IMG/VR virus record: IMGVR_UViG_3300009158_000031
Location: 1 to 64,000 of that record
Strand: one strand, 5' to 3'
Length of the DNA stretch: 64,000 nucleotides
Positions 3,157 through 23,295 of this stretch are shown here, piece after piece; within the stretch, counting starts at the first letter, position 1; the number at the start of each line of letters is the position of its first letter. The position numbers were made by a program, and so were the translations under genes. Below the pieces are notes generated by a model. That model ran no database searches and was not told the DNA's origin. It saw only the letters and a program-made list of their open reading frames with translations.

Positions 3157-3176
3157 ATATACAAAATAATCAAATA

Positions 3177-5473: not shown

Positions 5474-6184
5474 ATGACAAAATACTTTAAGTATTCTGAC
5501 TTTGAGCAAGCGTTTCTTTGCATTAATGGCGAAATAATTACCAATCCTGAATATCGTTCAACTTCTCGATTAGGTGATATGTTAGAAATTCAAAGTCTTA
5601 CATATGAAGTTGCAGATCCAACAACATATAAATTCACAAACGAAAACATCGGCAGATTAAATTACGATTATGCAGATACATTTTATCAATGGATGATATC
5701 TGGATCTACTGATAATGAAGCACTTCTTAAAGATTATCCTAATGTTGCAAGATTCATGGAAAAACCTAAATCTCCTGATCTTCCAGCAAATTTCAATACA
5801 TTCTATGGTCCTCGTATTCTAGAACAACTACCTCACGTTATCAAAGAACTTAAAGATCATCCTGATACTCGTCGAGCAGTAATTTCTATCCTTGATAAAA
5901 GTGATGTACTTCTTCTCGATAAACCAAATGAAACTCTTGAATTTCCTTGTTGTGATTCTGCAACATTCTCTATTCGTGAAGGTAAGCTGAATATTCACTT
6001 ACATATGCGTTCACAAAATATAGGTCAAGTACTTAAGCTGGATATGTATCTATGGGGTAGATTTCAAACGCAAATTGCTGAAGAATTAGGTTTACCTGTT
6101 GGTAGATTCGTTTCAACTGTAGTTTCTGCTCATGTATTCGAAAAAGATATTGCTTACTTAAATGACTTAATTATTAATTCGTAA
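5474..6184 (+). CDS. Thymidylate-synthase-fold dCMP-modifying enzyme (gp42-like, atypical)
   Basis: Motifs YGPRI, DTRRAV, catalytic PC, MRS and SAH. Asp occupies the cytosine-specificity position (RSQNIGQVLKLD). Confidence 0.85.
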   Translation: MTKYFKYSDFEQAFLCINGEIITNPEYRSTSRLGDMLEIQSLTYEVADPTTYKFTNENIGRLNYDYADTFYQWMISGSTDNEALLKDYPNVARFMEKPKSPDLPANFNTFYGPRILEQLPHVIKELKDHPDTRRAVISILDKSDVLLLDKPNETLEFPCCDSATFSIREGKLNIHLHMRSQNIGQVLKLDMYLWGRFQTQIAEELGLPVGRFVSTVVSAHVFEKDIAYLNDLIINS

Positions 6185-6194
6185 ATCCAAACAA

Positions 6195-7511
6195 ATGAAA
6201 GATAAAAAACTCCAAGTATTCTATGCAGTTCAAGTATCAAACTTTACATTAGTAAATGGCAAACCTAAATGGTTATTGCGAAATGATGCATGCACTAACA
6301 TTGCAATCGGAATCATCTCTACGGTTTTAAAGAGATATCCTGATCAATTCAAATTTTTAATTAAACTTCCTTCTGCTTATGATACAGTAGATGTGGTTCA
6401 ATTAGAAGATCTATTTAAACCAGAATTTCATAAAGATATCGAATTTCTTATTGATGATATCCCTCATTCTCCAGTAACTAGTCGCTATCATTTCGATATG
6501 CAACGATATCTCGTTCATCCTGAATATGCAAAAGCTTTCAGCGAAGTAGATCTTATGATTAATGATGAAAATACATTAACGAAGAATTGGCGAGTACTTT
6601 TCAATGAAATGAAATTAACCATCCCAATCATTTCTACGAATTATTTCCTCGATTCACCTATCGCAAATAAAGTTCCAGAAAAACTTCGTTATTATGAACG
6701 TCAAATGGAATCTTTTATTACATCGGATATTGCTGCATTTCAATGCGAAGCTGGCAGAGTCGAAGCTATGGAAGCTTATGATGTTTTATTTAAGACTCGT
6801 GAGATTCTAGCTCCTCAATCCGTATGGGGTGTTGGTGCACATTATGCCGAAATCGAAGAATATCATACAGATAAAAAATTCGAGATACCTACAATTTACT
6901 TTGGCAATCGTATTTCGGATACTGCAAATCGTTATACTAATTATGATACATTCGCCGAAGCAATTGGTATTCTATCGACTATCACCGATAAACCATTTCG
7001 AGCAGTAATGCTTAATCCAACTCGTAAAGTTACTGCCGATCAATTGAATTTAATTGCAGATCTATCTAAACATCAAGTTGAAGTAATGTCTAACGATGAA
7101 AAATTCACTCGTCAAGATTATCTAACATTCATCAACAAATCTCATATTGCTTGTAACCTATTCGTCACCGAAGTTCATGGTGGTGTTACTCATTGTGAAG
7201 CAATGATGGCTAAGAATATTTTGGTAATGCCTAAAGTAAATAATTACTGGCACAAAATGAAAAAGGCTGGTCATGAAGATTATCCTCTATTCACTGCACT
7301 CGATTCAACGAATTCTCATAAACCAGATGCTCGTGATGTAGCAGAAAAATTGAAGATTGCTCTTAATTATATAGATACTCCTATAGAAAATCAATTAAGA
7401 GAATTATGTCATAATGTCGGTTATAAATACGAATCTTACGAATCTGCTTGTGATCGTATCGTAAATGATATACGTTCGCTTGTTCTTCCTATCTTGAATA
7501 ATAAAAACTAA
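6195..7511 (+). CDS. GT-B glycosyltransferase (GT4/alpha-glucosyltransferase-like)
   Basis: C-terminal donor-binding motif EVHGGVTHCEAMMAKNILVMP and YFGNR. Lies in the modification operon. Confidence 0.7.
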   Translation: MKDKKLQVFYAVQVSNFTLVNGKPKWLLRNDACTNIAIGIISTVLKRYPDQFKFLIKLPSAYDTVDVVQLEDLFKPEFHKDIEFLIDDIPHSPVTSRYHFDMQRYLVHPEYAKAFSEVDLMINDENTLTKNWRVLFNEMKLTIPIISTNYFLDSPIANKVPEKLRYYERQMESFITSDIAAFQCEAGRVEAMEAYDVLFKTREILAPQSVWGVGAHYAEIEEYHTDKKFEIPTIYFGNRISDTANRYTNYDTFAEAIGILSTITDKPFRAVMLNPTRKVTADQLNLIADLSKHQVEVMSNDEKFTRQDYLTFINKSHIACNLFVTEVHGGVTHCEAMMAKNILVMPKVNNYWHKMKKAGHEDYPLFTALDSTNSHKPDARDVAEKLKIALNYIDTPIENQLRELCHNVGYKYESYESACDRIVNDIRSLVLPILNNKN

Positions 7512-7520
7512 TTAACAATT

Positions 7521-7555
7521 TGACGAGGAGTAATCATTTGGTTACTCCTTTGTCA
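7521..7555 (+). other. Intergenic stem-loop (weak terminator or processing site)
   Basis: TGACGAGGAGTAATC-ATTT-GGTTACTCCTTTGTCA inverted repeat. Confidence 0.55.
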
Positions 7556-7571
7556 TATAATAATTAAACAT

Positions 7572-8126
7572 ATGGCAAACTTAATTCTACTTGAAGGCTT
7601 ATCCAGAACAGGCAAATCAACTATTTCAAAATCGATTGCTGATGAATTTGGATTTCGTAATTTCTCCATTAAGACTAAGATGCCGGATTATGTACAAAAT
7701 TTACCTGATTTTTATCATGGTATGCACGTTTTAGCAAATGAATTATTCAGATCTTTTCCCCATGAAACTTTCATCTTAGATAGATCTTTTTTATCTGAGA
7801 TGGTTTATTCTCAATTTTTTAACAGACATTCATATATAAATAACGATCAAGTCATTTGCGATTTACTTCTAGATAACAAGTTTATACTTGTACTTCTAGA
7901 TAACAATCATCAAAATTATTTAGATCGTGGACCAAAAGATAAAATCACTTATTCTGAACAAGAATTTATTAAACAGAAAGATCTTTTCCAATGGCACTTC
8001 CATAATTTCCGTGACAAATACGATCCACAATCATGGCGAGATAGATTTTTACACATTGATACATCAATCACAACTCTAGAAGATACAACAAAACAAATTA
8101 AAACAAAGATAAAACAAGTATTATGA
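7572..8126 (+). CDS. dNMP (thymidylate-kinase-like) kinase
   Basis: P-loop LEGLSRTGKST and the ILDRSFLSE motif. Confidence 0.85.
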   Translation: MANLILLEGLSRTGKSTISKSIADEFGFRNFSIKTKMPDYVQNLPDFYHGMHVLANELFRSFPHETFILDRSFLSEMVYSQFFNRHSYINNDQVICDLLLDNKFILVLLDNNHQNYLDRGPKDKITYSEQEFIKQKDLFQWHFHNFRDKYDPQSWRDRFLHIDTSITTLEDTTKQIKTKIKQVL

Positions 8127-9280
8127 AAAATAAAGCAGCGATAGTAACCGGTAGTTCAGGTCTTATTGGTTCGCAAACGGTTAAATCTCTTATTGAAAAG
8201 GGATATTATGTGATTGGCATTGATAATGATATGCGATCATATTTTTTCGGATCCGATGCATCTACTAAAGAATCTGAACAAAAAATGTTATCTGATTATG
8301 GTAGAGAAAAATTCAATCCTGTAAGTATCGATATTCGAGATTATGAAGGATTGGAATTCGTATTCAAATATCTAACAGAAAATATAACTACTCTTCTTGG
8401 AGAACCAGTTGAATTTGATTTTGATTTAGTTGTTCATACCGCAGCACAACCTTCACATGATTGGGCAGCTAAAGAACCTCTAACTGATTTTTCTGTTAAT
8501 GCAATCGGTACCATGAATTTACTAGAATTAACTCGACTATATGCACCAAAAGCAACCTTCATCTTTACTTCGACTAACAAAGTTTATGGTGATACTCCTA
8601 ATCGTTTGAATTTAGTTGAATTGGAAACTCGATATGAAGCAGTATCTAATCTTTCGAAAAATCTTATCGAGGTAGATGAATTTATGTCAATCGACCATAC
8701 TAAACATTCCATCTTCGGTGCATCTAAAGTTGCTGCTGATATTATGGTTCAAGAATATGGAAGATATTTTGGAATGAATACCGTAGTATTTCGAGGTGGT
8801 TGTTTAACTGGACCTAATCATGCAGGTGCTGAACTTCATGGATTCTTATCTTACTTAATCAAATGTATTGTTAATAACAAACCTTATACCATCTTTGGTT
8901 ATAAAGGAAAACAAGTTCGAGATAACATTCATTCATCAGATCTAGTAAATATGTTCTGGCATTATCATCAAAATCCTATTCCAGGTGCAGTGTATAATGC
9001 AGGTGGTGGTCGAGAAAACAGCACATCTATTCTTGAAGCTATCGCAACCACAAATACTATTCTTAAAGAAGAAAATCCTGAACATAAAGATTGGAAGAAT
9101 TTCAAAATCTCCAATGATGCTCGAATCGGTGACCATCAATGGTATATCTCAGATCTAACTAAATTTAAGACTGATTATCCACAATGGCCTGGAATTACAA
9201 TTTCATTAGATGAAACTATTCGTCAAATAATCAAATTTGAACAAACAAAAACAGCTGAAGTACTAAATGAAGCGAATTAA
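8123..9280 (+). CDS. NAD-dependent NDP-sugar epimerase (CDP-paratose 2-epimerase-like SDR)
   Basis: TGSSGLIG, AAQPSHDWAA, STNKVYGD, HSIFGASKVAAD and GKQVRDNIH. Confidence 0.9.
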   Translation: MKNKAAIVTGSSGLIGSQTVKSLIEKGYYVIGIDNDMRSYFFGSDASTKESEQKMLSDYGREKFNPVSIDIRDYEGLEFVFKYLTENITTLLGEPVEFDFDLVVHTAAQPSHDWAAKEPLTDFSVNAIGTMNLLELTRLYAPKATFIFTSTNKVYGDTPNRLNLVELETRYEAVSNLSKNLIEVDEFMSIDHTKHSIFGASKVAADIMVQEYGRYFGMNTVVFRGGCLTGPNHAGAELHGFLSYLIKCIVNNKPYTIFGYKGKQVRDNIHSSDLVNMFWHYHQNPIPGAVYNAGGGRENSTSILEAIATTNTILKEENPEHKDWKNFKISNDARIGDHQWYISDLTKFKTDYPQWPGITISLDETIRQIIKFEQTKTAEVLNEAN

Positions 9281-10535
9281 CATTGGCGTAATCATTTATA
9301 CGAAGATTGGTACTAAAACTTCTATTCTTCTAGGAGAATTCGAGTTTTGGAACGATTTTCAACGAATGAACCCTGATTGTGACTTCTATTTTATATCAAT
9401 ATCGAAGAACACAACAAAGAGTATTATTGACCATCAACATCTACTTAACTTTCCAGTTAGGATGATACAGGTGTATGATGTGAAGGATCTTTCCAAGCTA
9501 AATAACCTTTCTGGGATATTTTCATATATGACTAGAAATACCTTCTTTGGAGGTCAAATGAATCCATCATGTGTTCATAATTACGTGATATCTGCTTACT
9601 GTAGCAATACGCTAAACCTTCCTTTATTTATTAGAACTCCTGATTCAGAATATCCCTATTTGGATTATAAGAAAATGGCGGATGTTCGAATTGAGAAAGC
9701 TACACCAAGTACACCTAAATTCATTAGAGAAAATAAACGTTTTCTAGATGTTATGACTGCAGATATCAAATATGAAAATGTTTATTTTGTAGCCAATGGA
9801 TCTCGTCATATGTGTGATTGGGTACAAGATATTGTATACCATGATATTCCAGATGTTATGAGAATAATGGAACCTAAAGAAATTTCTAGAAGAACTCTTT
9901 ATGTTTCGGATGATGTTCTATTCAATCTTCATATTAATAGAGAGCGTTATGCAAATCTAAATGTTGAAGTAAAGAATAATAAGCTTTTGTTTATTGGATT
10001 CCTTTCCGGATCAGTTGCAAAAAATCGTTTAGTTGCTTTAACTAAAATGTTGAAGGAAAAAACCGAAGAAATTCCTATGGATATTATTGGACCTGGAGCA
10101 GATTTGTTGATAGAAGATATTATTCGTGAGGATGTTACTCTTGAAAACCGTTCAGTTTTTGGTGATGAATTTTTCAAGCTACTTAATACATATTTAGCTT
10201 ATGTGTTTATTGGTAAAGGTAATGCGATAAACAAATATGTAAACAAAACAATTTACGATTGTATATCTGCAAAATGTCCTATTGTCGTTTACTCTGCATG
10301 TGATACTAATCAAGCTATTTTTAAGAGCAACGAATATTATTTCTCTAACGAATCCGAACTAAAAACAACCATGGATAAATTAAGAGATCCTGCAATTCGT
10401 AATCGTTGGATCGATGAACAGAAAGCTGATATTGAAGAAAAATTAACACATAACGAAGAGATATTTAAGTTCTCTCAATTCTGTAAGCCTAAAGATCAAG
10501 TTGTTAATAACATTAGAATCGAGCCATTATTCTAA
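9267..10535 (+). CDS. T4 beta-glucosyltransferase-like DNA glycosyltransferase
   Basis: TFFGG parallels T4 BGT NFFGG, and TPDSEYP parallels FTDIRLP (catalytic Asp). The C-terminal KTIYDCISAK...YYFSNESEL parallels BGT RVWETMAS...FYVNNRAEL. Confidence 0.75.
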   Translation: MKRINIGVIIYTKIGTKTSILLGEFEFWNDFQRMNPDCDFYFISISKNTTKSIIDHQHLLNFPVRMIQVYDVKDLSKLNNLSGIFSYMTRNTFFGGQMNPSCVHNYVISAYCSNTLNLPLFIRTPDSEYPYLDYKKMADVRIEKATPSTPKFIRENKRFLDVMTADIKYENVYFVANGSRHMCDWVQDIVYHDIPDVMRIMEPKEISRRTLYVSDDVLFNLHINRERYANLNVEVKNNKLLFIGFLSGSVAKNRLVALTKMLKEKTEEIPMDIIGPGADLLIEDIIREDVTLENRSVFGDEFFKLLNTYLAYVFIGKGNAINKYVNKTIYDCISAKCPIVVYSACDTNQAIFKSNEYYFSNESELKTTMDKLRDPAIRNRWIDEQKADIEEKLTHNEEIFKFSQFCKPKDQVVNNIRIEPLF

Positions 10536-10551
10536 TTCATAAAATAATAAA

Positions 10552-11166
10552 ATGAATATATTTGTACTAGATCAAGATCCGAGAATTGCTGCACAAATGC
10601 ATTGTGACAAACATGTTCCAAAAATGATTATCGAACATGCGCAAATGATGACGGCTGCATATTATTCTACTTTAGGTATTAGCCGAAAGAAAGAAATTCC
10701 GGATCAACAATTTGTAGTAAATGAAATGTTTCGCGGTTGGCCTAGAAGAAATGCCGATGGAAGTGAATGGCATTATGCAATATCACATGTCAATCATCCA
10801 TGCACAATTTGGACACGAGCTTCAATCGAGAATTTTAATTGGTTACTAGATTGTACTGAAGAACTTTGTTACGAATTCACTCGTCGTTGGGGTGGTAAAC
10901 ATTCAATCGAAAAGATCGTAGATTGGATGCGTCAAAATCCTCCTAAATTGCCTTCTTCTAAACAAACTCCTTTCGCAATGGCAATGCCGGATTGTTTTAG
11001 AACTACTAATCCGATTGAATCTTATCGTAGATACTATGGCATGAAAACAACTTACATGAAAGTAGCTTGGATTCGAGGAACTCAACCGGATTGGTGGTCA
11101 GATCAATTTGCCAAAGATTGCGTTAATCAATATTATATTGCAAACCCAGCCTTGTTGGTTGGATAA
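10552..11166 (+). CDS. Pyrimidine-dimer DNA glycosylase / endonuclease V-like
   Basis: MNIFVLD...HCDKHVPKMIIEHAQM, HVNHPCTIW, FAMAMPD and ESYRRYY. Confidence 0.85.
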   Translation: MNIFVLDQDPRIAAQMHCDKHVPKMIIEHAQMMTAAYYSTLGISRKKEIPDQQFVVNEMFRGWPRRNADGSEWHYAISHVNHPCTIWTRASIENFNWLLDCTEELCYEFTRRWGGKHSIEKIVDWMRQNPPKLPSSKQTPFAMAMPDCFRTTNPIESYRRYYGMKTTYMKVAWIRGTQPDWWSDQFAKDCVNQYYIANPALLVG

Positions 11167-14276: not shown

Positions 14277-14882
14277 ATGCCTAAAACATTCATGAAATAT
14301 CAGGATTTCGTTGATCCTAAAAGATCAGGGAAATATCAGAGCATCACGATATTTGATGTTGATGATACGTTAGTCGTAACTAAATCTCAAATTAAAGTAA
14401 TTGATACTAATACCAATAAGTCTTTTACTTTAACTCCGGCAGAATTTAATGAATTTGAAAAGAAATCTCATCATGAAATGGATTATTCAGATTTCAAAAA
14501 CCTAGATATTCTAAAGGCCGGTAAAATTATAGAAAATATCTTCTCTATCCTTAAGAAAGAAATGCGTAAAGGCGGAAGAGTTGGTATTATCACTGCCAGA
14601 GACGATCGAAATCTAATCTATCAATTTCTACTTCATCATGGAGTAGTGGTTAATCCAAATTACATATTTGCAGTTAATGATCCTGAACTTGAATTTACTG
14701 GAAGCGTAGCTGAAAAGAAAAAACAAGCCTTTATAGAATTAATAAAGATTGGATTTAGAGACTTTACATTTTATGACGATGATGCTGAAAATATACGAAT
14801 TGCTAAAGAGTTAGATGGTGAAATTGAAGGTATACATATTAAGACTAAACATGTAAAGGTAAGATGGAACAACAAAGACTGA
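14277..14882 (+). CDS. HAD-superfamily phosphatase
   Basis: Motif I FDVDDTL, motif II ITAR, a Lys, and motif IV FYDDD. Confidence 0.8.
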   Translation: MPKTFMKYQDFVDPKRSGKYQSITIFDVDDTLVVTKSQIKVIDTNTNKSFTLTPAEFNEFEKKSHHEMDYSDFKNLDILKAGKIIENIFSILKKEMRKGGRVGIITARDDRNLIYQFLLHHGVVVNPNYIFAVNDPELEFTGSVAEKKKQAFIELIKIGFRDFTFYDDDAENIRIAKELDGEIEGIHIKTKHVKVRWNNKD

Positions 14883-15343
14883 TACACCGAAACGATCAAA
14901 AGATTGATACATTCGCAGAAATCGTTGAATCGATTGCTACTTTATCTGCCGCATCAACTAAGAAAGTTGCATGTATGGCTATTCACAAAAATTTTATTAA
15001 GATTGCATCCTTTGGATATAATGGATCTTATGCTGGTGCTCCCATCAACGAAACAACTGGAACCGAAGAAGATTCGCTAGAACCTGGTAATTCAGGATTT
15101 ATTCATGCAGAAGTTAACATGATTTCGAAATTTCGAGAACATGATCCTGAAAATTATATCGTTTTTCTTACGCTTTCTCCTTGCAAAATGTGCACTAAGA
15201 TTCTAGTTAATTCTGGATTTAAAATGGTGTATTGGTTAGAAGATTATCGAGAACAAGAACATCTCACTATTTTCGATGAATGTGGAATTCATTATGGTAA
15301 TATAAACAAACTCAAAAAAGATTATTTCAAATTAGTAAAATGA
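14864..15343 (+). CDS. dCMP deaminase
   Basis: GYNG, HAE and SPCKMC zinc motifs. Confidence 0.9.
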   Translation: MEQQRLIHRNDQKIDTFAEIVESIATLSAASTKKVACMAIHKNFIKIASFGYNGSYAGAPINETTGTEEDSLEPGNSGFIHAEVNMISKFREHDPENYIVFLTLSPCKMCTKILVNSGFKMVYWLEDYREQEHLTIFDECGIHYGNINKLKKDYFKLVK

Positions 15344-15762
15344 AATATACTCTAACAATTCTAAAACCAGATGCAATATCTCGTGGAATAGAATCTAAAA
15401 TCACCAAACACATAACCGATGCCGGTTTTCAAATTGCCGCTCGTAAAAGAATTCACCTAACAAATGAAGAGGCCTACGATTTCTATGAGGTACACAAAGA
15501 CAAACCTTTCTTTAGATCTCTTGTAGATTACATGACTTCTGGAGCTTGTGTATTTATGGTTCTTCGTAATGAGAATTCTCCTAATGCAATAGATCATTTT
15601 CGTAAGTTAATAGGATCTACCGATCCGGCTGAAGCAGAGGAAGGAACCATTCGTAAAATGTATGCAGAATCCCTAGAAAGAAACTCTATCCATGGATCTG
15701 ATTCACCGGAATCAGTTATTAAGGAGTGTGATCTTATGTTTCCGGAATTATCGTTCAATTAA
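15340..15762 (+). CDS. ndk: Nucleoside diphosphate kinase
   Basis: LKPDA, FYEVHKDKPFF, GSTDP, GTIR and NSIHGSDS. Confidence 0.95.
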   Translation: MKYTLTILKPDAISRGIESKITKHITDAGFQIAARKRIHLTNEEAYDFYEVHKDKPFFRSLVDYMTSGACVFMVLRNENSPNAIDHFRKLIGSTDPAEAEEGTIRKMYAESLERNSIHGSDSPESVIKECDLMFPELSFN

Positions 15763-15774
15763 AATTAATAAATT

Positions 15775-16137
15775 ATGATAGGTGAAGAATTAGACAAATA
15801 TATCCAAAATCGAGTTAAAGAAGTTTTGGATAATTCAAAATTCCCTGAATATGATGACATTCATAGTGATTCATTTTCAGAGTTAATTGACAAATTAATA
15901 ATTGTACATATTAGATTATGGTACTTAGAAGATGTTATGAGTGTTGAAAAGGATGCTGATAAAATGATGATCCTTAAAAAGAAAGCCGATATAACTTTTA
16001 AAGAGAAACGTCCTATGTTAGTAAGATCAATCGATAAAATTATCAATAATATGTGTACTGGTAAATTTTCTCCTCCATCAGAAAGTCCAAAATTATATGT
16101 TGGATTTACGGATGACGATGAAAAAATTAATGCCTAA
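15775..16137 (+). CDS. Small helical protein (DUF4254-like), glycosylation-locus associated
   Basis: ELIDKLIIVHIRLWYLED motif; translationally coupled to the next GT-like gene. Confidence 0.45.
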   Translation: MIGEELDKYIQNRVKEVLDNSKFPEYDDIHSDSFSELIDKLIIVHIRLWYLEDVMSVEKDADKMMILKKKADITFKEKRPMLVRSIDKIINNMCTGKFSPPSESPKLYVGFTDDDEKINA

Positions 16138-17003
16138 TGAAATATATCATAACATCAAAAAATGTTCGTTCTGGTACTAGCGTAGATGATGCCGCTGATC
16201 CATTTCAAGTTACCGAAATAGCAACTGAATTAATAATAACTCGGTTGTATTTGATACATCTGTTAAATACCTCGATTATAGACATTGAAGATACTATCGT
16301 ATGTATAGGAGATAGACGATGTTTATATACAAACATTTTCAAAAATGTTATGTCATTCGAAGATTATACTAATTCTATTGACATCGATAAAAAAGATGTT
16401 ATAGATCTATTAGAATCCAGCAAATTTAATTCGCTTGCCTCTGGATTAGTAGACTCGAGAGAATTACCATATCTACCTTTTTATCGAAATTGGGATAGAG
16501 ATAAAAATCATATTTTAAACGTTGAAGATAGTGATCTATCAGATTATGATTTATCTTCACCGTTCTTGTGTTTAGTTATTCGAAAACGAAGTGCATGGTC
16601 AGAAAAAAACATGTCAAATGATTTTTGGAATGATGTTATATCTGAATTAGAAAATCGAGGAATTAAAATATTCGTATTTGGAAAAGAAACTGAGGGTTTT
16701 TGTACAGAAAAAACGAAGCAAATTAAAACATTTCGAGATTGGTGTTCTATTGTTAAACATGTTAATTGTAAACATGTTGCTAGTACAATGACTGGTGGAG
16801 TATATCCTCTTATCGTATTTGGAAATTCAAATTGTAAAATGACAATAATCGACAATACCAATCTTAAGAAAGCTCATGGACACGATCCATCGTTCTATAA
16901 CTCATGTATAAATTTCTCTAATATCGAAATGAAATTTATCGAAAATATACCAACAATAAAAGAATTTGCCGATGAATTATGTAGTAATTACATCAATAAA
17001 TAA
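16137..17003 (+). CDS. Putative GT-B (GT9-like) glycosyltransferase
   Basis: The C-terminal half RKRSAWSEKN...FWNDVI...IFVFGK...MTGG has the GT9-like layout. Confidence 0.45.
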   Translation: MKYIITSKNVRSGTSVDDAADPFQVTEIATELIITRLYLIHLLNTSIIDIEDTIVCIGDRRCLYTNIFKNVMSFEDYTNSIDIDKKDVIDLLESSKFNSLASGLVDSRELPYLPFYRNWDRDKNHILNVEDSDLSDYDLSSPFLCLVIRKRSAWSEKNMSNDFWNDVISELENRGIKIFVFGKETEGFCTEKTKQIKTFRDWCSIVKHVNCKHVASTMTGGVYPLIVFGNSNCKMTIIDNTNLKKAHGHDPSFYNSCINFSNIEMKFIENIPTIKEFADELCSNYINK

Positions 17004-17955
17004 TTTAACCGAATCTATTCGAAAATTCTCGGCAATACCGGATTGGCATGTTATTGTTGTAGGCGATTTAAAGAGTAAAAGATATTCACATCCAAATGTG
17101 ACTTATCTAGGAGTAGAAGAACAAACGAAACTTAATTTATTTAGTGCATTAACAACTCCATACAATCATTATTCAAGAAAGAATTTAGGTTATTTGTACG
17201 CTATAAGTAAAGGAGCTAATCTAATTTTTGATACTGACGATGATACTATTCCGTATGATGATTGGTATCCAAGAGATTTTGTATGCGATAAATTGGTAGA
17301 TGGATCAACCGTTATCAATCCCTATACGCTATTCACTAAAGAAAAATGTTGGCCTAGAGGATTAGACCTATCTCATATAAATAAGCCAAATACTTACACG
17401 ATATCTAATAAAGGCTCAAAGATAGGTGTTTGGCAAGGAGTAATTGATGATGATTCAGATTTTGATGCAATATATCGATTAACCATAAATAAGCACATAA
17501 AATTTAATAAAGAAGATGATGTCGCAATAGGAACACGATGTTACACCCCTTTCAATACACAAAGTACTTTATGGAATACTAAATTTCATTCTTTGCTTTA
17601 TGTTCCCATCTCAGTAGATTTCAGATTTACGGATATTCTAAAAGGTTATATAGCTCAAAGAATTATGTGGGATTATGGATATCAGGTGGGTTTTCATTAT
17701 CCTAACACATATCAAGTTAGAAATGAGCACGACTTCTATAAAGATTTTCTAGACGAGATTTCCATGTACCGATCAATTCCTTCATTGATGAATACTCTAG
17801 AAAGTATAAAACTCAAAAATGAGTCTATTGAAAATGATCTATTTTCGGTTTATTCTGCTTTATTAGATATTGGCATCGTGAAAGAGGAAGAGATGATAAA
17901 CCTACAACATTGGATAGATGATATCTCTAAGTTATCTAAAAAGGATTTAAGGTAA
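16972..17955 (+). CDS. STELLO/DUF288 (GT75-related) glycosyltransferase
   Basis: VITSIN, VIVVGDLKS, YNHYSRKNLGYLYAI, IFDTDDD, WPRG, PFNTQST and FRFTDILKGY. Confidence 0.8.
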   Translation: MNYVVITSINNLTESIRKFSAIPDWHVIVVGDLKSKRYSHPNVTYLGVEEQTKLNLFSALTTPYNHYSRKNLGYLYAISKGANLIFDTDDDTIPYDDWYPRDFVCDKLVDGSTVINPYTLFTKEKCWPRGLDLSHINKPNTYTISNKGSKIGVWQGVIDDDSDFDAIYRLTINKHIKFNKEDDVAIGTRCYTPFNTQSTLWNTKFHSLLYVPISVDFRFTDILKGYIAQRIMWDYGYQVGFHYPNTYQVRNEHDFYKDFLDEISMYRSIPSLMNTLESIKLKNESIENDLFSVYSALLDIGIVKEEEMINLQHWIDDISKLSKKDLR

Positions 17956-18652: not shown

Positions 18653-19915
18653 ATGGCTACTGGACCATACACCAATTCGTTAAACTTTCGTTTAAACCGA
18701 ACAAAACCTCTAAATTATACAGATTTAGATAATAACTTTAGATATCCAAATCAATGGGGACTCGATCGATCATATCTGTCAGGTATGATGGTTGTTTCGT
18801 ATGATTTTGGTTATACTGCATCAGATTCAATATCTATGTATATTGCTTCTAGCGATCATACGAGTACTATGCTTAATGCTCCAGGATTAACTGGTGCTCA
18901 ATGGACTGCAATTGCAGTTCCTAGTGCTGGATATGTTGGTCCAACCGGACCTCAAGGTGGAATTGGTGCTCAAGGTGCTGGATCTCAAGGATCTCAAGGT
19001 CCTCAAGGTTATCAAGGTGTTACCGGTTTTCAAGGAGTTCAAGGATCTCAAGGAGCTACTGGTATTCAAGGACATACTGGATATCAAGGGGTTCAAGGTA
19101 CTAAAGGAGATCAAGGTTTTAAAGGAGATCAAGGATTCCAAGGAGCTCAAGGTTATACTGGTAATAAAGGAGATCAAGGTTTTCAAGGTATTCAAGGAAC
19201 TGTAGGTAATCAAGGATTCCAAGGAGCTCAAGGAGAACAAGGAGATCAAGGTAACTCTATTACTGGATCTCAAGGAGATCAAGGATTTCAGGGAGATCAA
19301 GGATTTCAGGGAGATCAAGGTACTAAAGGAGATCAAGGTATTCAAGGTATTACTGGGCCAGGAGTTGGGTCTCAAGGACCTACTGGTTTCCAAGGTATTC
19401 AAGGAGCTAAAGGAGATCAAGGATTTCAAGGTATTCAAGGATCTAAAGGAGATCAAGGATTTACTGGATTTCAGGGTAATCAAGGACCTACCGGTTTCCA
19501 AGGTAATCGAGGTAATCAAGGATATCAAGGAGATCAAGGTTATCAGGGATATCAAGGTTATCAGGGATATCAAGGAGATCAAGGATTTCAAGGATTCGAT
19601 ACAGCATATGCTGCTATAAATAATCAAGTTTCTAGTTACACATTAGTGTTAGCCGATGCTGGTAAATTAGTGGAAATAGATAATGCCGCATCTTCAATTC
19701 TTACGGTTCCTTTGAATGCATCGGTTGCTTTTCCTGTAGGTACTCAAATTATTATTGCTAGACTTGGTACTGGTGAGGTGAGCGTTGTTGGTACTGGTGG
19801 TGTAACGGTTGTTAGTGCAAATTCATTTACATTCTTAAATAATCGATACTCATCTGCATCTCTCATAAAAAGAGGTACCAATGCATGGTATCTATTTGGA
19901 GATCTTAAACCTTAA
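18653..19915 (+). CDS. Collagen-like tail/head fibre protein
   Basis: N-terminal PLNYTDLDNNF fibre-attachment motif, a long G-X-Q collagen tract, and a C-terminal YTLVLADAGK domain typical of phage fibres. Confidence 0.85.
   Translation: MATGPYTNSLNFRLNRTKPLNYTDLDNNFRYPNQWGLDRSYLSGMMVVSYDFGYTASDSISMYIASSDHTSTMLNAPGLTGAQWTAIAVPSAGYVGPTGPQGGIGAQGAGSQGSQGPQGYQGVTGFQGVQGSQGATGIQGHTGYQGVQGTKGDQGFKGDQGFQGAQGYTGNKGDQGFQGIQGTVGNQGFQGAQGEQGDQGNSITGSQGDQGFQGDQGFQGDQGTKGDQGIQGITGPGVGSQGPTGFQGIQGAKGDQGFQGIQGSKGDQGFTGFQGNQGPTGFQGNRGNQGYQGDQGYQGYQGYQGYQGDQGFQGFDTAYAAINNQVSSYTLVLADAGKLVEIDNAASSILTVPLNASVAFPVGTQIIIARLGTGEVSVVGTGGVTVVSANSFTFLNNRYSSASLIKRGTNAWYLFGDLKP
18929..19600 (+). repeat. Collagen Gly-X-Y coding repeats (GFQ/GDQ/GYQ)
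   Basis: 9-nt periodic caagg repeats. Confidence 0.9.
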
Positions 19916-19930
19916 TAAATTTAAAACGAT

Positions 19931-20659
19931 ATGATAATTGGATCTATAGGAACTGTTAGTTCTACTTGGGAACCACCAATACCTATGAGTGGTTTAATGG
20001 AATGGTATGAACCTGGTAATACGGCCGGTATTATCATTGCCAATCCACCGACCACGCCTATGGATGAGATGATAAACCTTGCTAATCCAACAGGCTCACC
20101 AAAATATCAACAATTATTTGTTTCTGAATTTGGAAGTGATTTACTTGGAGCTACCACGATAACAACAAATGCAACTTCGAATAGTTGGAGTAATTCAACG
20201 GATTGGAGTTCTATGACTGCATATACAGTAATTATCATATCTAAATATAACGATCCATCAAATAATCTAGAAAATACTTTTACAAACTTAGGTGGACCAG
20301 TCACGTTTAACTTAGGTAATGGTAATAATGGTGGTCATGGAAAAATAAATTTATGTATAGTCAATGGAGATGTTTTATACGCAGGAGATGCCGCCGATAT
20401 ACTTTGGGGAATGTATACTTTATGCGGTAGCACAACCATTAAATTAAATTTTTATAGAAATGCGAATCCAACTTCAATTCTAAGTCCACCTGCTAATTTC
20501 CGACCTCTTCCCGGAGGAACCCTGATTTTTTCATTTGATCCACCTGAAACATCTTCGTCGGTTGGTGCGGTTTTGCTCTATAATAGAATAATAACCGATG
20601 ATGAAAGAAATTCGATATTTCAACATTATAAGAAACAATTTCCTTTATCTGATACTTAA
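19931..20659 (+). CDS. Fibre-associated protein, LamG/ConA-like
   Basis: GLMEWY...VGAVLLYNRIITDDE pattern; follows the fibre gene. Confidence 0.55.
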   Translation: MIIGSIGTVSSTWEPPIPMSGLMEWYEPGNTAGIIIANPPTTPMDEMINLANPTGSPKYQQLFVSEFGSDLLGATTITTNATSNSWSNSTDWSSMTAYTVIIISKYNDPSNNLENTFTNLGGPVTFNLGNGNNGGHGKINLCIVNGDVLYAGDAADILWGMYTLCGSTTIKLNFYRNANPTSILSPPANFRPLPGGTLIFSFDPPETSSSVGAVLLYNRIITDDERNSIFQHYKKQFPLSDT

Positions 20660-20667
20660 CATACAAC

Positions 20668-20699
20668 AAAAGCTCTAGAAATTAATCTAGAGCTTTTTT
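20668..20699. terminator. Bidirectional rho-independent terminator
   Basis: AAAAGCTCTAGA-aattaa-TCTAGAGCTTTT lies between the convergent + gene and the tmRNA. Confidence 0.85.
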
Positions 20700-20713
20700 C
20701 ATTTAAGTGGAAG

Positions 20714-21149
20714 TGGAGCTGGAGGGAATCGAACCCTCGTCTTGTTCAGCTAATACTAAGAATTCATTTACAGGCTTAGTTTGGTTTATGACACCAACAA
20801 ACTTTTGTGCATTTCGTTTTTCTTGTTGACTTAATGCTCGGTCAAGTTTACTCTTCGGTATAAGCCGAATTTCACAGAACAATTAACAGCGATCTTAATG
20901 GGTTACTGATTGTTCTCGGATGGTACTACTAACCCTTTTTCCCGGTGTGCACATTTTTTTAATATCAGTAAGTGCGACTGATTGGTTAGGCAGCGATAGC
21001 TACTTCACCACCAACGAATGCCATAGCATCTTCGAAGGTAAAAGTTGACGTATTGTCAGTTATTGTTTTGATAGGTAATTTAAGTGTTTCCATCTAACAC
21101 TGCCTGCATTCAAAGAACTACGACTGCCAATCGATGCCTGGTCAGCCCC
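20714..21149 (-). ncRNA. ssrA: tmRNA
   Basis: 5' GGGGCTG pairs with 3' CAGCTCC-A, giving the G3:U Ala identity. T-arm GAGGGTTCGATTCCCTC. Internal tag frame 21057-20986 reads DNTSTFTFEDAMAFVGGEVAIAA*. Confidence 0.95.
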
Positions 21150-21189
21150 ATATTAATTTGTGTATGTATTATATGTATACTACAGAAAC

Positions 21190-21218
21190 AAAAAAAGGAG
21201 AGTACGAATACTCTCCTT
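21190..21218 (-). terminator. Rho-independent terminator (UUCG loop)
   Basis: Minus strand AAGGAGAGTA-TTCG-TACTCTCCTT followed by a T run, downstream of the lipoprotein gene. Confidence 0.85.
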
Positions 21219-21240
21219 AATGCGATTGATGTTGGTACAA

Positions 21241-21408
21241 TTACTTAGTAGTAGCAGTATCAACACAAGTGGCTTTGCAAGTGGTATCAACCGAAGTTGA
21301 ATCTGTTGCAACCATCGTAGAATCAGTTGCTGTTGCAGTTGATTCAGGAGCATTTCCACAAGAAGCTAAAGCTACCGTTGCGATTAATGCGAAAATTACG
21401 TTTTTCAT
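21241..21408 (-). CDS. 55-aa lipoprotein (missed by the ORF track)
   Basis: MKNVIFALIATVALAS-CGNAPESTATATDSTMVATDSTSVDTTCKATCVDTATTK*. It has an SPII lipobox (LAS-C) and its own terminator. Confidence 0.85.
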   Translation of the reverse strand: MKNVIFALIATVALASCGNAPESTATATDSTMVATDSTSVDTTCKATCVDTATTK

Positions 21409-21472
21409 AAATTAATTATTTTAAATTGTTATAAGATAGTTATATGTAAGCCTAGGTTCGTTAGTTTTGGTA

Positions 21473-21540
21473 TTGTTAACAAGTTTCCTAAAATAAATGT
21501 TAAAATATTTTTTTATTCCACAAAAAAGTATTATATTTGT
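21473..21540 (+). promoter_or_regulatory. Bacteroidota-type promoter, copy of 3089-3156
   Basis: 32 identical bp with 3125-3156; TAnnTTTG at 21532-21539. Confidence 0.8.
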
Positions 21541-21562
21541 TATAACCAATTAAATAAATTAT

Positions 21563-21763
21563 ATGAGCATCACAAAACAAATTGAAGAAAAAATCCAAAA
21601 TGATCCAATCTTTGCAGAATTATACGAACAACACGAATCTGCAAAATTCCATCGTTTACTCAATAAGACAATAAACATTCAAGAAGCACTATCTAACTTC
21701 TTTAATGAAACTCCCATGAACAAAAATGAAAATCCTTCATATAATAAATTACATAACATATAA
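21563..21763 (+). CDS. Hypothetical protein
   Basis: First ORF after the promoter. Confidence 0.65.
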   Translation: MSITKQIEEKIQNDPIFAELYEQHESAKFHRLLNKTINIQEALSNFFNETPMNKNENPSYNKLHNI

Positions 21764-21765
21764 AC

Positions 21766-22074
21766 ATGGGAAATAAACTTACAAAATCTGAATCTGAGCA
21801 GATAACTGCACTCGCTAAAGAGTTTGCTCAGTTTTGGGAAACCATCAATGAAAGAGAAAGAGAATTGAATAAAATTGATGAAAGAAAAACGGAAATACAA
21901 ACCGAACTTGGATATGTTCTTAATAGAATAAATGAAGTTCGTGTAGAAGAGAAAAAATTTACTGATAAATTAAAGAAAAAATATGGAAATTGTGAAATCA
22001 ATATGGAGACGTTTGAAGTCTATCCTATTGCCGAAGAATCGGCTAAATCAAAAAACAACGTACCTAATGTTTAA
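21766..22074 (+). CDS. Coiled-coil hypothetical protein
   Basis: Heptad pattern and a C-terminal KKYGxxxINxET. Confidence 0.7.
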   Translation: MGNKLTKSESEQITALAKEFAQFWETINERERELNKIDERKTEIQTELGYVLNRINEVRVEEKKFTDKLKKKYGNCEINMETFEVYPIAEESAKSKNNVPNV

Positions 22075-22372
22075 CGTTTTTCGTTATCCCTATGGTAAAA
22101 TGTTATCTGCATCTAAATCAGGTTACCGAGAAAAAAATCCAGGAAACGAAGTATTCTTCAATGCAAATATCTTCACCGTGGAAGATGGCAAAATTTGGTA
22201 TGGTGATATCGACTATACTAAGGATCGAGAAACTTTAGAGAAGATCGCAACAAAATTGGAACGAAATCTATACATCCTAAAGGAGTTAGATGGTCGTTTC
22301 GAAAACGAAAAAATTGAAGCTAATCAAATTAAGAAAAAAGCTATTAAGCTTATTCAACCTACAAAATTCTAA
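22067..22372 (+). CDS. Hypothetical protein
   Basis: ORF with the start moved to ATG 22067. Confidence 0.7.
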   Translation: MFNVFRYPYGKMLSASKSGYREKNPGNEVFFNANIFTVEDGKIWYGDIDYTKDRETLEKIATKLERNLYILKELDGRFENEKIEANQIKKKAIKLIQPTKF

Positions 22373-22376
22373 TAAT

Positions 22377-22955
22377 ATGGAAGAGTTAGAAGTAAAGAAA
22401 AAATACCAATGGACTTCCGGTCCTAGATCCAATCAATTAGAAGTTTATCTTGCAGAAGACGAAACTCATATCTGGTTTGAAAGTGGTAGAAATGTACAAA
22501 AAGAAATGATGGATGTTCAACTTCGACAAATTGAAGATTCGATGTACAATTCATTAGTTGGTGCACAAACTGAACGTGAACGTATACAAGGTTTACTAGG
22601 AAATGATGCACCATTGACAATGTCAAATATCACTCCTGAGCAATTGGGATTAAATCAACCGGCACATATTGTTGAAGTCGCACCACCAGCACCTATCAAA
22701 GAAGAAAATCCAATTTCTCTTATTCTAGCCAAACAAAAAAAGCTGGAAGTAGTCGATATCAAAATGAATATGCCGGTAGAAATTCCTTCGGCTAAAGTTT
22801 TCGAATTTCTTACAATGATGTTCGATGAAGAAGAAGTACTTGATATTCTATCGGCTAAAATCACAGAGAAATTCTCTACCGAAGATATCCAAATCATTGT
22901 TAGAAATTCAATCATAAAATATTATACAGAAGAAAATAATTCAAAACCAGAATAA
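22377..22955 (+). CDS. Hypothetical protein
   Basis: ORF with the start moved to ATG 22377. Confidence 0.7.
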   Translation: MEELEVKKKYQWTSGPRSNQLEVYLAEDETHIWFESGRNVQKEMMDVQLRQIEDSMYNSLVGAQTERERIQGLLGNDAPLTMSNITPEQLGLNQPAHIVEVAPPAPIKEENPISLILAKQKKLEVVDIKMNMPVEIPSAKVFEFLTMMFDEEEVLDILSAKITEKFSTEDIQIIVRNSIIKYYTEENNSKPE

Positions 22956-22956
22956 T

Positions 22957-23295
22957 ATGAAAAAACCACAATCTCAAGCAAGAGCACAACGTCGTGCATA
23001 TGAATCTTTCCTAAAACAAACTAATCCACAAGCTTATAAGCAATGGAAAGCTGAATCTATCGAAAGAGGAAATCAAATACATGAATCTAATGTTGAGGCT
23101 GTTCGTAAAGCAGAGGAAGAACATTATGAAAAATTACAAACTTCAATTATTGAATCAATGAGAGCAGATGGAAAATCTGATTCTGAAATTGATGCATATG
23201 TTGCTGATTGGGTACAAACCATTAAAGTATGGGGTTCCGGAGAAAGACCTAAAAGAATTAGAGAAATTCACCGAGAAAAATTAAATAAAGCCTAA
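22957..23295 (+). CDS. Hypothetical protein
   Basis: Tightly packed operon ORF. Confidence 0.7.
   Translation: MKKPQSQARAQRRAYESFLKQTNPQAYKQWKAESIERGNQIHESNVEAVRKAEEEHYEKLQTSIIESMRADGKSDSEIDAYVADWVQTIKVWGSGERPKRIREIHREKLNKA

What the first reader, a model, noticed from the sequence alone, without database searches (positions are those of the whole stretch)
15775..17955. Second glycosylation cassette (DUF4254-like, GT9-like, STELLO/GT75-like) next to the fibre genes
Three overlapping genes, separate from the DNA-modification operon, lie immediately before the collagen fibre unit. STELLO/DUF288 is related to GT75, which includes UDP-arabinopyranose mutases. Inference: the cassette glycosylates virion proteins or collagen fibres, remodels the host surface, or supplies a furanose donor to the DNA GTs.
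Basis: partly seen in the sequence, partly recalled or inferred. Interest (0 to 1): 0.6.

Follow-up and report, generated by a model that had tools for sequence, protein, structure and literature searches.

The report
Phage three-gene sugar-transfer cassette
A large freshwater phage carries three tightly coupled sugar-handling genes, including a relative of enzymes that turn six-ring sugars into five-ring sugars, as one piece of a much larger phage-encoded glycan pathway whose target (host envelope or virion, probably not DNA) is still unknown.

Summary
Window 15775-17955 (+) carries three coupled genes: a 120-aa DUF4254-like helical hairpin, a 288-aa Pfam-dark GT-B protein whose model best matches GT9 heptosyltransferases, and a 327-aa STELLO/GT75-type protein.

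The third protein's family profile matches the solved GT75 NDP-pyranose mutase MtdL at E 1e-30. It keeps the DxD motif, the catalytic arginine and most sugar- and phosphate-binding residues. It replaces the Mn-ligand His with Gln and Asp87 with Tyr, invariantly in 107 sequences.

The DUF4254-to-GT9 order mirrors bacteria (Gillisia, Spirosoma). The cassette is not a stand-alone unit. The 254-kb phage has at least 15 more glycan genes at four other loci, including Gmd, Fcl-like, GT2, GT10, GT11, GT25, a carbamoyltransferase and DegT. Related jumbo phages hold homologues of the cassette genes inside large glycan clusters (all three in one 219-kb phage), away from fibre or DNA-modification genes.

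Most likely the cassette is a cytoplasmic glycan-assembly module: a transferase with a helper, plus a GT75-type nucleotide-sugar enzyme. The acceptor is unresolved. I lean slightly to host lipid-linked or LPS-core glycan over virion protein; DNA is unlikely. Mutase activity is plausible but unproven. Interest is moderate.

The parts
15775..16137 (+). Gene 1 (P0001, 120 aa): a DUF4254-like helical-hairpin protein, the presumed partner of the GT9-like transferase.
   Evidence: Pfam PF14063 gives E 1.8e-4, below the cut-off. There are 88 relatives, some carrying PF14063. The model has pLDDT 80 and shows a three-helix hairpin with no informative fold match. Invariant charged residues include D27, D32, E36, D39, K40, R47, W49, K78, D87 and K88. 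In 30 other viral loci a Pfam-less protein of about 280-300 aa usually lies directly beside it; 8 of these are clear P0002 homologues. In bacteria it precedes a true GT9 gene by 2-6 nt.
16137..17003 (+). Gene 2 (P0002, 288 aa): a divergent GT-B glycosyltransferase with a GT9-like fold.
16972..17955 (+). Gene 3 (P0003, 327 aa from ATG 16972; a TTG at 16966 is also open): a short STELLO/GT75-type GT-A enzyme.
   Evidence: Pfam STELLO gives 42.1 bits, residues 220-323 on profile positions 1-105 of 387. More than 1100 relatives were found, nearly all of those listed carrying PF03385. The family profile hits MtdL (7xpr, 7yua) at E 1.4e-30 over residues 49-287. The active-site signature is invariant in 107 sequences. 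With STELLO clusters left out, the nearest Atlas clusters are RGP / UDP-arabinopyranose mutase at 0.97-0.98.
16135..16139 (+). TAATG stop-start overlap between gene 1 and gene 2.
   Evidence: Read directly from the sequence. Lake metatranscriptome contigs from three runs bridge this junction.
16972..17003 (+). 32-nt overlap between gene 2 and gene 3.
   Evidence: Read directly from the sequence. The related 219-kb phage has a similar overlap: 9166-10029 and 10001-10984 in L009.

Best explanation
The three genes form a translationally coupled, cytoplasmic glycan-assembly module. It works together with the phage's other sugar genes.

Shown:
- Gene 2 is a GT-B transferase of the GT9 structural type.
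- Gene 1 is the phage counterpart of the bacterial DUF4254 protein, which is encoded directly in front of GT9 (RfaF-type) genes.
- Gene 3 belongs to a large prokaryotic branch of the STELLO/GT75 superfamily. It keeps the DxD motif, the arginine that GT75 enzymes glycosylate during catalysis, and the Asp/Gln/Arg/His residues that hold the sugar and diphosphate in MtdL.
- The same phage encodes Gmd, an Fcl-like SDR, GT2, GT10, GT11, GT25 and GT32-like enzymes, a carbamoyltransferase, an FkbM/RfbT-type methyltransferase and two DegT aminotransferases elsewhere in its genome.

Inferred:
- Gene 3 binds an NDP-sugar with a divalent metal. It either isomerises the sugar (pyranose to furanose, by the GT75 mechanism through the arginine) or transfers it.
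- Gene 2, held or steered by the hairpin protein of gene 1, adds a sugar to the growing glycan.
- The finished fucose- and amino-sugar-containing, carbamoylated or methylated oligosaccharide ends up on something other than DNA.
- I lean slightly to a host lipid-linked acceptor of the LPS-core type over virion proteins. GT9, GT25 and DUF4254 are LPS-core-associated in bacteria. The bacterial STELLO-like genes sit in Wzm/Wzt O-polysaccharide loci. The phage record has no initiating phosphoglycosyl transferase of its own.
For: - Fold and profile evidence for gene 2.
- DUF4254 -> GT9 adjacency, tested in Gillisia and Spirosoma (2-nt and 6-nt gaps). It is also noted for Flavobacteria in PMC9425974.
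- A DUF4254-like gene lies next to a Pfam-less protein of about 280-300 aa in nearly all of 30 viral loci, 8 of them P0002 homologues.
- Gene 3 against MtdL at E 1e-30, with D89/D90/D91, R129, D163, Q197, R218, D221, R250 and H253 matching MtdL D109-D111, R159, D195, Q229, R257, D260, R289 and H292. All are invariant in 107 sequences.
- RGP clusters are nearest by language-model features.
- Other glycan loci in the same genome.
- Homologues of the cassette genes lie inside large glycan clusters in related phages (all three in the 219-kb phage, spread over about 8 kb).
- Bacterial STELLO-like genes lie beside Wzt (21 of 80 loci), ABC-2 permease (17), GT2 (29) and GT4.
- No Bac_transf or Glycos_transf_4 gene in the phage record.
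- Pieces of the cassette occur in four lake metatranscriptome runs.
Against: - No biochemical data exist for any of the three families.
- Gene 2 fails the Pfam GT9 model. By a low-confidence alignment it lacks WaaC Asp261 and His266 (Met218 and Tyr223 instead), so neither its donor nor its acceptor can be read off from GT9.
- Gene 3 has Gln in place of the Mn-ligand His287 and Tyr in place of Asp87. Asp87 was shown essential in MtdL; His287 is lost in the inactive AtRGP5.
- In plant STELLO the equivalent arginine was dispensable (PMC4906169).
- Gene 1's role as a partner is inferred from gene order only; the complex prediction could not be run.
- The three genes are not an obligate trio. Several P0002 loci lack both neighbours within 8 kb. 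None of 80 bacterial STELLO-like loci has a P0002-like or DUF4254 gene.
- The lean toward a host lipid-linked acceptor is weak. Related phages carry Maf-like and NeuB genes, typical of protein O-glycosylation. The record is only 83% complete.
Confidence: 0.5

Rival explanations
1. Virion glycosylation. The cassette, with the phage's other GTs, builds O-linked glycans directly on structural proteins in the cytoplasm, for example on the collagen-like tail fibre encoded 700 nt downstream. Mycobacteriophages, chloroviruses and mimivirus fibrils do this.
For: - The cassette lies directly before a 178-aa ORF and a collagen-repeat tail-fibre-like protein, with baseplate genes further on.
- Related phages place the same genes beside Maf/MptE-like, CMP-transferase and NeuB genes, the flagellin-type protein O-glycosylation toolkit.
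- The phage has no lipid-carrier initiating enzymes.
- A PA14/GLEYA lectin-like ORF sits next to a GT2 gene just past the window.
Against: - The fibre adjacency is not conserved in any relative examined.
- This genome lacks detectable Maf, NeuB or CMP-transferase homologues.
- The bacterial counterparts of all three genes are linked to LPS or O-polysaccharide loci, not to protein glycosylation.
Confidence: 0.3
2. Gene 3 is an ordinary GT-A glycosyltransferase and not a mutase. The cassette is then two sequential transferases plus a helper, and no furanose sugar is involved. This rival concerns the chemistry only and is compatible with either acceptor.
For: - The Mn-ligand His287 of MtdL is Gln, and the essential Asp87 is Tyr, in all 107 family members.
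- Pfam RGP does not match the genome.
- The plant STELLO arginine mutant still complemented, while the DxD mutants did not.
- In bacteria the gene often follows or precedes other GTs in O-polysaccharide loci.
Against: - The arginine equivalent to the GT75 autoglycosylation and catalytic site is invariant. So are eight other MtdL sugar- and diphosphate-binding residues.
- The nearest non-STELLO clusters are UDP-arabinopyranose mutases.
Confidence: 0.35
3. DNA hypermodification. The cassette supplies a special donor to DNA glycosyltransferases in the upstream ThyA-like, kinase and SDR cluster, or itself transfers sugar to modified bases.
For: - Same strand, no convincing terminator, and 12 nt after NDK and dCMP deaminase.
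- A ThyA-like gene, a kinase-like gene, an SDR and two Pfam-dark ORFs lie 5-10 kb upstream.
- Phage GT-B enzymes are known to put heptose, Kdo and other sugars on 5hmC (bioRxiv 10.1101/2023.12.21.572611).
- A 57%-identical homologue of the upstream SDR lies 4 kb from a STELLO-like gene in one bacterial MAG.
Against: - In every relative examined, the three genes travel with GT10, GT11, GT2, carbamoyltransferase or nonulosonic-acid genes, not with ThyA-like or DNA-modification genes.
- No T4 beta-GT-type structure is among the 50 best fold matches of gene 2.
- Bacterial homologues of gene 3 sit in polysaccharide export loci.
Confidence: 0.07

Closest known systems
MtdL / Hyg20 and plant RGP/UAM (CAZy GT75, metal-dependent NDP-pyranose mutases; PDB 7xpr, PMC9937993)
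   Same: Gene 3's family profile aligns to MtdL residues 65-323 at E 1e-30. It shares the DDD motif, the catalytic/autoglycosylated Arg, Asp195, Gln229, Arg257, Asp260, Arg289 and His292. It has a similar size (327 against 376 aa) and is soluble.
   Different: Gln replaces the Mn-ligand His287, Tyr replaces Asp87 and Lys replaces Arg90. The base-selecting positions differ (His for Ser86, Lys for Asn42). Pfam RGP does not match. No activity is known, and the genomic setting is O-polysaccharide or phage glycan clusters, not antibiotic pathways.
Plant STELLO1/2 (Pfam PF03385, Golgi proteins that regulate cellulose synthase assembly; PMC4906169)
   Same: The Pfam STELLO model matches above its cut-off, and both have a region homologous to GT75 with a DxD motif that is essential in the plant proteins.
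   Different: The phage protein covers only profile positions 1-105 of 387. It has no transmembrane anchor and lacks the long C-terminal part. The plant arginine was dispensable, whereas here it is invariant.
GT9 heptosyltransferases WaaC / WaaF / TibC
   Different: About 10% identity and 30-60 residues shorter. The Pfam GT9 model fails. The positions of WaaC Asp261 and His266 are Met and Tyr in the alignment; that these two residues contact the heptose is from my own memory of the literature, not from a tool. ADP-heptose is therefore doubtful as donor.
Bacterial DUF4254-RfaF gene pair (Bacteroidota)
   Same: Same order, same strand and tight coupling: 1-nt overlap here, 2-nt and 6-nt gaps in Gillisia and Spirosoma. 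The linkage is noted in PMC9425974.
   Different: The phage protein is shorter (120 against 203-220 aa) and matches only profile positions 50-139. Its partner is not a recognisable sequence member of GT9.
Glycan and 'LPS' gene clusters of cyanomyophages and huge phages (for example Synechococcus phage S-T4, 735-kb phage LR756501)
   Same: A gene 3 homologue at 30% identity lies in S-T4 among heptose-pathway and fucosyltransferase genes. A 48% homologue lies in LR756501 within 6 kb of a DUF4254 gene, an SDR and a GT2.
   Different: These phages have no P0002 homologue. Here the pathway is scattered over at least five loci, not held in one cluster.

Membership tests
Pfam DUF4254 (PF14063) | Score at or above the 27-bit gathering cut-off. 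| tested here: not met
   21.8 bits, E 1.8e-4, profile positions 50-139 of 144; 20.3 bits in the six-frame search. Relatives at 65-77% identity carry PF14063, and the LR756501 homologue scores 42 bits. The protein is therefore a shortened, divergent member by transitive evidence.
Pfam DUF4254 (PF14063) | Genomic linkage to a GT9 / RfaF-type transferase gene. | tested here: met
   In Gillisia and Spirosoma, DUF4254 is followed after 2 and 6 nt by genes scoring 91-97 bits on PF01075. Here it is followed, with a 1-nt overlap, by a protein with a GT9-like fold.
GT9 (Pfam PF01075 Glyco_transf_9) | Sequence match to the family model. | tested here: not met
   No hit at E <= 1 in hmmscan or in the six-frame genome search.
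GT9 (Pfam PF01075 Glyco_transf_9) | GT-B two-domain fold closest to solved GT9 structures. | tested here: met
GT9 (Pfam PF01075 Glyco_transf_9) | Donor-site residues: the phosphate-binding Lys (WaaC K192), the heptose-contacting Asp261 and His266, and the catalytic Asp13. | tested here: inconclusive
   hhalign at Prob 74.8% puts K157 on K192, M218 on D261 and Y223 on H266. The N-terminal alignment (T14 on D13) comes from a 23%-probability global alignment. The residue roles in WaaC are from my memory of the literature.
Pfam STELLO (PF03385, formerly DUF288) | Score at or above the 27.8-bit gathering cut-off. | tested here: met
   42.1 bits, E 6.5e-11; 42.7 bits in the genome search. Only profile positions 1-105 of 387 are covered.
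Pfam STELLO (PF03385, formerly DUF288) | Plant-type architecture: N-terminal membrane anchor and a long C-terminal DUF288 region. | tested here: not met
   The protein is 327 aa and ends at profile position 105. More than 1100 relatives are 320-340 aa long. Absence of a membrane anchor was judged from the sequence by eye and not with a predictor.
CAZy GT75 (RGP / UDP-arabinopyranose mutase / MtdL) | Sequence homology to a characterised member. | tested here: met
   The family profile against MtdL gives E 1.4e-30, 110 bits, over 239 profile positions. The Pfam RGP model PF03214 itself finds nothing.
CAZy GT75 (RGP / UDP-arabinopyranose mutase / MtdL) | DxD motif and the conserved autoglycosylated/catalytic arginine. 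| tested here: met
   D89-D90-D91 and R129 align with MtdL D109-D111 and R159. They are invariant in 106 of 106 aligned sequences.
CAZy GT75 (RGP / UDP-arabinopyranose mutase / MtdL) | Mn-coordinating His287 and the essential Asp87 of MtdL. | tested here: not met
   Q248 and Y67 stand at these positions, invariantly. The paper reports that the inactive AtRGP5 lacks His287.
CAZy GT75 (RGP / UDP-arabinopyranose mutase / MtdL) | NDP-pyranose / NDP-furanose mutase activity or reversible self-glycosylation. | not testable with these tools
   This needs an enzyme assay.

The most novel reading that the evidence does not exclude
The short STELLO-like family is found in more than 590 bacterial species, mostly in Wzm/Wzt O-polysaccharide loci, and in aquatic jumbo phages. 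It could be an unrecognised, flavin-independent NDP-sugar pyranose-to-furanose mutase clade of the GT75 type, with its own active-site signature (Gln for the metal-binding His, Tyr for Asp87). In this phage it would be translationally coupled to a dedicated GT9-like furanosyltransferase and its DUF4254 helper. The phage would then make and install a furanose sugar that the host cannot make.
Probability: 0.3. Interest if true: 0.7.

Novelty: new variant of a known kind. Interest (0 to 1): 0.45.

Why it matters
Furanose sugars in bacterial glycans are currently explained almost entirely by flavin-dependent mutases of the UGM type. The only characterised bacterial GT75 mutases are two antibiotic-pathway enzymes. 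If the short STELLO-like family is a mutase, a widespread second route to furanosyl donors has been missed in hundreds of bacterial O-polysaccharide loci and in phages.

The conserved DUF4254 -> GT9 pairing, now seen from Bacteroidota chromosomes to phages, gives a concrete, testable handle on a domain of unknown function that was reported in all 50 Flavobacteria genomes of one survey.

For phage biology, the finding shows that a freshwater jumbo phage invests about 18 or more genes in making a complex glycan. That raises the question of whether such phages camouflage their virions or rewrite the host surface. If the genes turn out to be ordinary transferases, the result is a routine addition to the list of phage glycosyltransferases.

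Tried and rejected
The proposed contact is therefore untested.
- The fold search 'atlas' library was not available.
- hhalign of the gene 2 family against single WaaC or WaaF sequences gave nothing. Only a five-sequence GT9 profile gave a usable local match.
- The idea that gene 3 is specifically a GDP-L-fucopyranose mutase was prompted by the phage's Gmd and Fcl-like genes and by MtdL's substrates. Bacterial contexts do not support it: Gmd lies within 7 kb in only 2 of 80 loci.
- I looked for an obligate trio. P0002 loci L004, L013 and L015 lack the other two genes within 8 kb. None of 80 bacterial STELLO-like loci has a P0002-like or DUF4254 gene.
- The Pfam-less families of about 290-300 aa beside DUF4254 in 20 other viral loci could not be tied to GT9. 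The best signals were PF01075 at E 0.083 and hhalign at E 0.011.
- NCBIfam and PHROGs gave nothing for the three proteins.
- megablast against phage records found nothing.
- The listing of cluster members returned no names.
- The large representative search was not used. Family scans, word searches and folds had already placed all three proteins.
- I first assumed a marine origin because relatives carry Tara/GOS labels. This is corrected: the window's own DNA is held by freshwater and lake runs.
Full report
**What is there.** The window is the first 64 kb of a 254,393-bp IMG/VR virus record, judged 83% complete, with about 33% G+C. A near-identical 134-kb contig exists in another sample. The DNA of the cassette is held by freshwater and lake metagenomes from some 20 studies. 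A baseplate wedge gene at 35268-37043 has relatives in Tenacibaculum, Flavobacterium and Chryseobacterium jumbo phages, Lak megaphages and phage PAU. This is therefore a jumbo myovirus, and its host may be a Bacteroidota member (inference).

At the stated coordinates there are three + strand genes: 15775-16137 (120 aa), 16137-17003 (288 aa) and 16972-17955 (327 aa; a TTG at 16966 is also open). The first two share one base (TAATG). The last two overlap by 32 nt. The cassette starts 12 nt after a nucleoside-diphosphate kinase gene, which follows a dCMP deaminase gene. It ends 148 nt before a 178-aa ORF, which is followed by a collagen-repeat tail-fibre-like protein.

**Gene 1.** Pfam DUF4254 matches below its cut-off (21.8 against 27 bits). 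The 88 relatives include clusters that carry PF14063. A homologue in the 735-kb phage LR756501 scores 42 bits. The AlphaFold model (pLDDT 80) is a helical hairpin with no informative structural relative. Many charged residues are invariant.

The gene order is telling. In Gillisia mitskevichiae and Spirosoma endophyticum, full-length DUF4254 genes are followed after 2 and 6 nt by genes that score 91-97 bits on the GT9 Pfam model. A published survey lists DUF4254 as present in all 50 Flavobacteria studied and 'linked to RfaF' (PMC9425974). In 30 further viral loci, the DUF4254-like gene almost always abuts a Pfam-less protein of about 280-300 aa. Eight of these are clear homologues of gene 2.

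A five-sequence GT9 profile aligns its residues 156-233 with WaaC 191-276 at Prob 74.8%, E 2.6e-5. This puts Lys157 on the phosphate-binding Lys192, but Met218 and Tyr223 on Asp261 and His266. Gene 2 is therefore a GT-B transferase of the GT9 structural type. It is not a sequence member of GT9, and probably does not use ADP-heptose. That last step is an inference resting on remembered residue roles.

**Gene 3.** Pfam STELLO matches above its cut-off, but only for residues 220-323 against the first 105 of 387 profile positions. This fits the plant architecture described in PMC4906169, where a GT75-homologous region precedes DUF288.

A profile of 32 relatives hits the crystal-structure sequences of MtdL, the GT75 NDP-pyranose mutase, at E 1.4e-30. 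Reading that alignment against the residues defined in PMC9937993:

| MtdL residue | Gene 3 residue | Status |
|---|---|---|
| D109-D110-D111 (DxD) | D89-D90-D91 | kept |
| R159 (autoglycosylated / catalytic) | R129 | kept |
| D195 | D163 | kept |
| Q229 | Q197 | kept |
| R257 | R218 | kept |
| D260 | D221 | kept |
| R289 | R250 | kept |
| H292 | H253 | kept |
| D87 | Y67 | changed |
| H287 (Mn ligand) | Q248 | changed |
| R90 | K70 | changed |

In an alignment of 107 family members, 75 of them from bacterial genomes, every one of these positions is invariant. With STELLO clusters excluded, the nearest Atlas clusters are RGP / UDP-arabinopyranose mutases at 0.97-0.98. The Pfam RGP model itself does not match.

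The family is large. More than 1100 clusters were found in the word search. At least 590 bacterial species carry a copy at 37-45% identity, across Bacteroidota, Desulfobacterota, Cyanobacteria, Patescibacteria and others.

In 80 bacterial loci the commonest neighbours are:
- GT2 in 29 loci;
- a Wzt-type ABC ATPase in 21;
- an SDR epimerase in 18;
- an ABC-2 permease in 17;
- GT4;
- an unknown 321-aa family that ends 3-21 nt before the gene in 17 loci.

This is the setting of ABC-transporter-dependent polysaccharide synthesis.

**The cassette is a fragment of a larger pathway.** Proteins from relatives' glycan clusters find homologues at four other places in this genome. Pfam and NCBIfam name them:
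- A 609-aa GT2 protein at 64.3-66.1 kb, next to a PA14/GLEYA ORF.
- A GFO/IDH/MocA oxidoreductase and a DegT aminotransferase at 139-141 kb.
- GT32-like, GT2, GT11 and GT10 enzymes, an Fcl-like SDR (GDP-L-fucose synthase model, E 1e-66, below its cut-off) and a DegT aminotransferase at 171.7-176.7 kb.
- An FkbM/RfbT-type methyltransferase, a carbamoyltransferase, a GT2-like protein, GT25 and GDP-mannose 4,6-dehydratase (382 bits) at 241-247 kb.

In a related 219-kb phage, homologues of genes 2 and 3 (57% and 66% identical, likewise overlapping) lie inside one roughly 17-kb cluster. That cluster holds GT2/GT4, GT10, GT11, a carbamoyltransferase, a Maf-like gene, a CMP-transferase, NeuB, SDRs and DegT. 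It is flanked by DNA-polymerase exonuclease, dUTPase and PhoH genes. The DUF4254 gene lies 6.6 kb further on, next to another 287-aa Pfam-less ORF.

Other relatives show the same company. Cyanophage S-T4 has a gene 3 homologue among heptose-pathway and fucosyltransferase genes. None of these loci contains homologues of this window's NDK, deaminase, fibre or ThyA-like genes. The phage record has no Bac_transf or Glycos_transf_4 initiating enzyme.

**Expression.** Contigs from four lake metatranscriptome runs hold near-identical short pieces of all three genes. Three of them bridge the gene 1 / gene 2 junction. DNA carry-over in such libraries cannot be excluded, so this is only weak support for transcription in nature.

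**How it most likely works.**
- Shown: the three genes are tightly coupled. All three belong to glycan biochemistry. They are part of a conserved phage glycan gene set.
- Inferred: gene 3 binds an NDP-sugar and a metal and either isomerises or transfers the sugar. Gene 2, with the gene 1 hairpin as helper, transfers a sugar onto a growing glycan in the cytoplasm.

I put about 45% on mutase-type chemistry for gene 3 and 35% on plain transfer. The invariant arginine favours mutase-type chemistry. The invariant Gln248 and Tyr67, and the dispensable arginine in plant STELLO, argue against it.

For the acceptor I put about 40% on a host lipid-linked or LPS-core-type glycan, for three reasons: GT9, GT25 and DUF4254 are associated with LPS core; bacterial STELLO-like genes lie in Wzm/Wzt loci; and the phage has no initiating enzyme of its own. 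I put about 30-35% on virion proteins, because a fibre gene is next door, relatives carry Maf-like and NeuB genes, and virion glycosylation is known in mycobacteriophages and giant viruses. I put about 7% on DNA.

**Comparison and novelty.** Phage-borne glycosyltransferases and 'LPS' clusters are well known. What is new is the particular combination:
- a phage copy of the DUF4254 -> GT9-type pair;
- a Pfam-dark, shortened GT9-like family;
- a member of a large, uncharacterised prokaryotic branch of the STELLO/GT75 superfamily with its own invariant active-site signature.

A full-text search for GT75 with bacteriophage found only metagenomic CAZy tallies and unrelated papers by title; I did not open them. 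I rate this a new variant of a known kind, of moderate interest. It would be of higher interest if the mutase reading proves true.

**Limits.**
- The complex prediction and the Atlas fold library were unavailable.
Gene 3's fold rests on homology to the solved MtdL.
- The N-terminal nucleotide-binding residues (T7, I9, D32 against MtdL T13, I15, D40) were matched by eye only, outside the HMMER alignment.

Noticed in passing
window 20711-21149 (- strand): A phage-encoded tmRNA: Rfam RF00023, 85.6 bits against a gathering score of 47, full-length model match. ARAGORN reported nothing in 20000-23000.
   Followed up: partly
window 20668-20697: A strong bidirectional terminator-like hairpin (12-bp stem, T runs on both strands) directly after the 242-aa ORF. 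It closes the fibre unit and precedes the tmRNA.
   Followed up: no
window 5474-11166: A candidate DNA-hypermodification set: ThyA-like 236 aa, Pfam-dark 438 aa, P-loop kinase-like 184 aa, SDR 385 aa, Pfam-dark 422 aa and a weak Pyr_excise-like 204 aa. The two dark ORFs have no PDB sequence relatives. The SDR has a 57%-identical homologue 4 kb from a STELLO-like gene in a Doudnabacteria MAG (L096).
   Followed up: partly
G000 64301-67144, 139047-141045, 171692-176713 and 241247-246781 (outside the window): Four further glycan loci in the same phage. They hold GT2; GFO/IDH/MocA with DegT; GT32-like, GT2, GT11, GT10, Fcl-like and DegT; and an FkbM/RfbT methyltransferase, a carbamoyltransferase, a GT2-like protein, GT25 and Gmd.
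   Followed up: yes
G000 66278-67144 (just past the window end): A 288-aa ORF with PA14/GLEYA carbohydrate-binding domains lies next to the 609-aa GT2 protein. It may be a lectin-like virion or adhesion protein.
   Followed up: no
L035 9033-9980 and 16 other bacterial loci (alignment A4): An unknown family of about 321 aa, with no Pfam, NCBIfam or PDB match, ends 3-21 nt before the STELLO-like gene on the same strand in 17 of 80 bacterial loci. It has an invariant DD pair and an H-P-x-K-L-S-x-W motif, and is a likely functional partner.
   Followed up: partly
L009 16311-16952; proteins P0193 and P0194: In the 219-kb phage, DUF4254 occurs fused behind a weak HAD-like piece (213 aa). In two 206-aa metagenomic proteins it occurs as a tandem duplication.
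   Followed up: no
window 35268-37043: A baseplate wedge protein with relatives in Tenacibaculum, Flavobacterium and Chryseobacterium jumbo phages, Lak megaphages, huge phages LR7565xx and Sphingomonas phage PAU. This hints at a Bacteroidota host.
   Followed up: partly
window 19071-19562 (collagen-repeat region of the fibre gene): Lake metatranscriptome contigs show several skip and go-back joints of 84-268 nt inside the collagen repeats. This fits repeat-length variants among related phages, or assembly slippage.
   Followed up: no
window 3153-5075, 14277-15762: An NAD-dependent DNA ligase with a BRCT domain, a polynucleotide-kinase-like ORF, a dCMP deaminase and a nucleoside-diphosphate kinase lie in the same + strand gene run as the cassette.
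   Followed up: no
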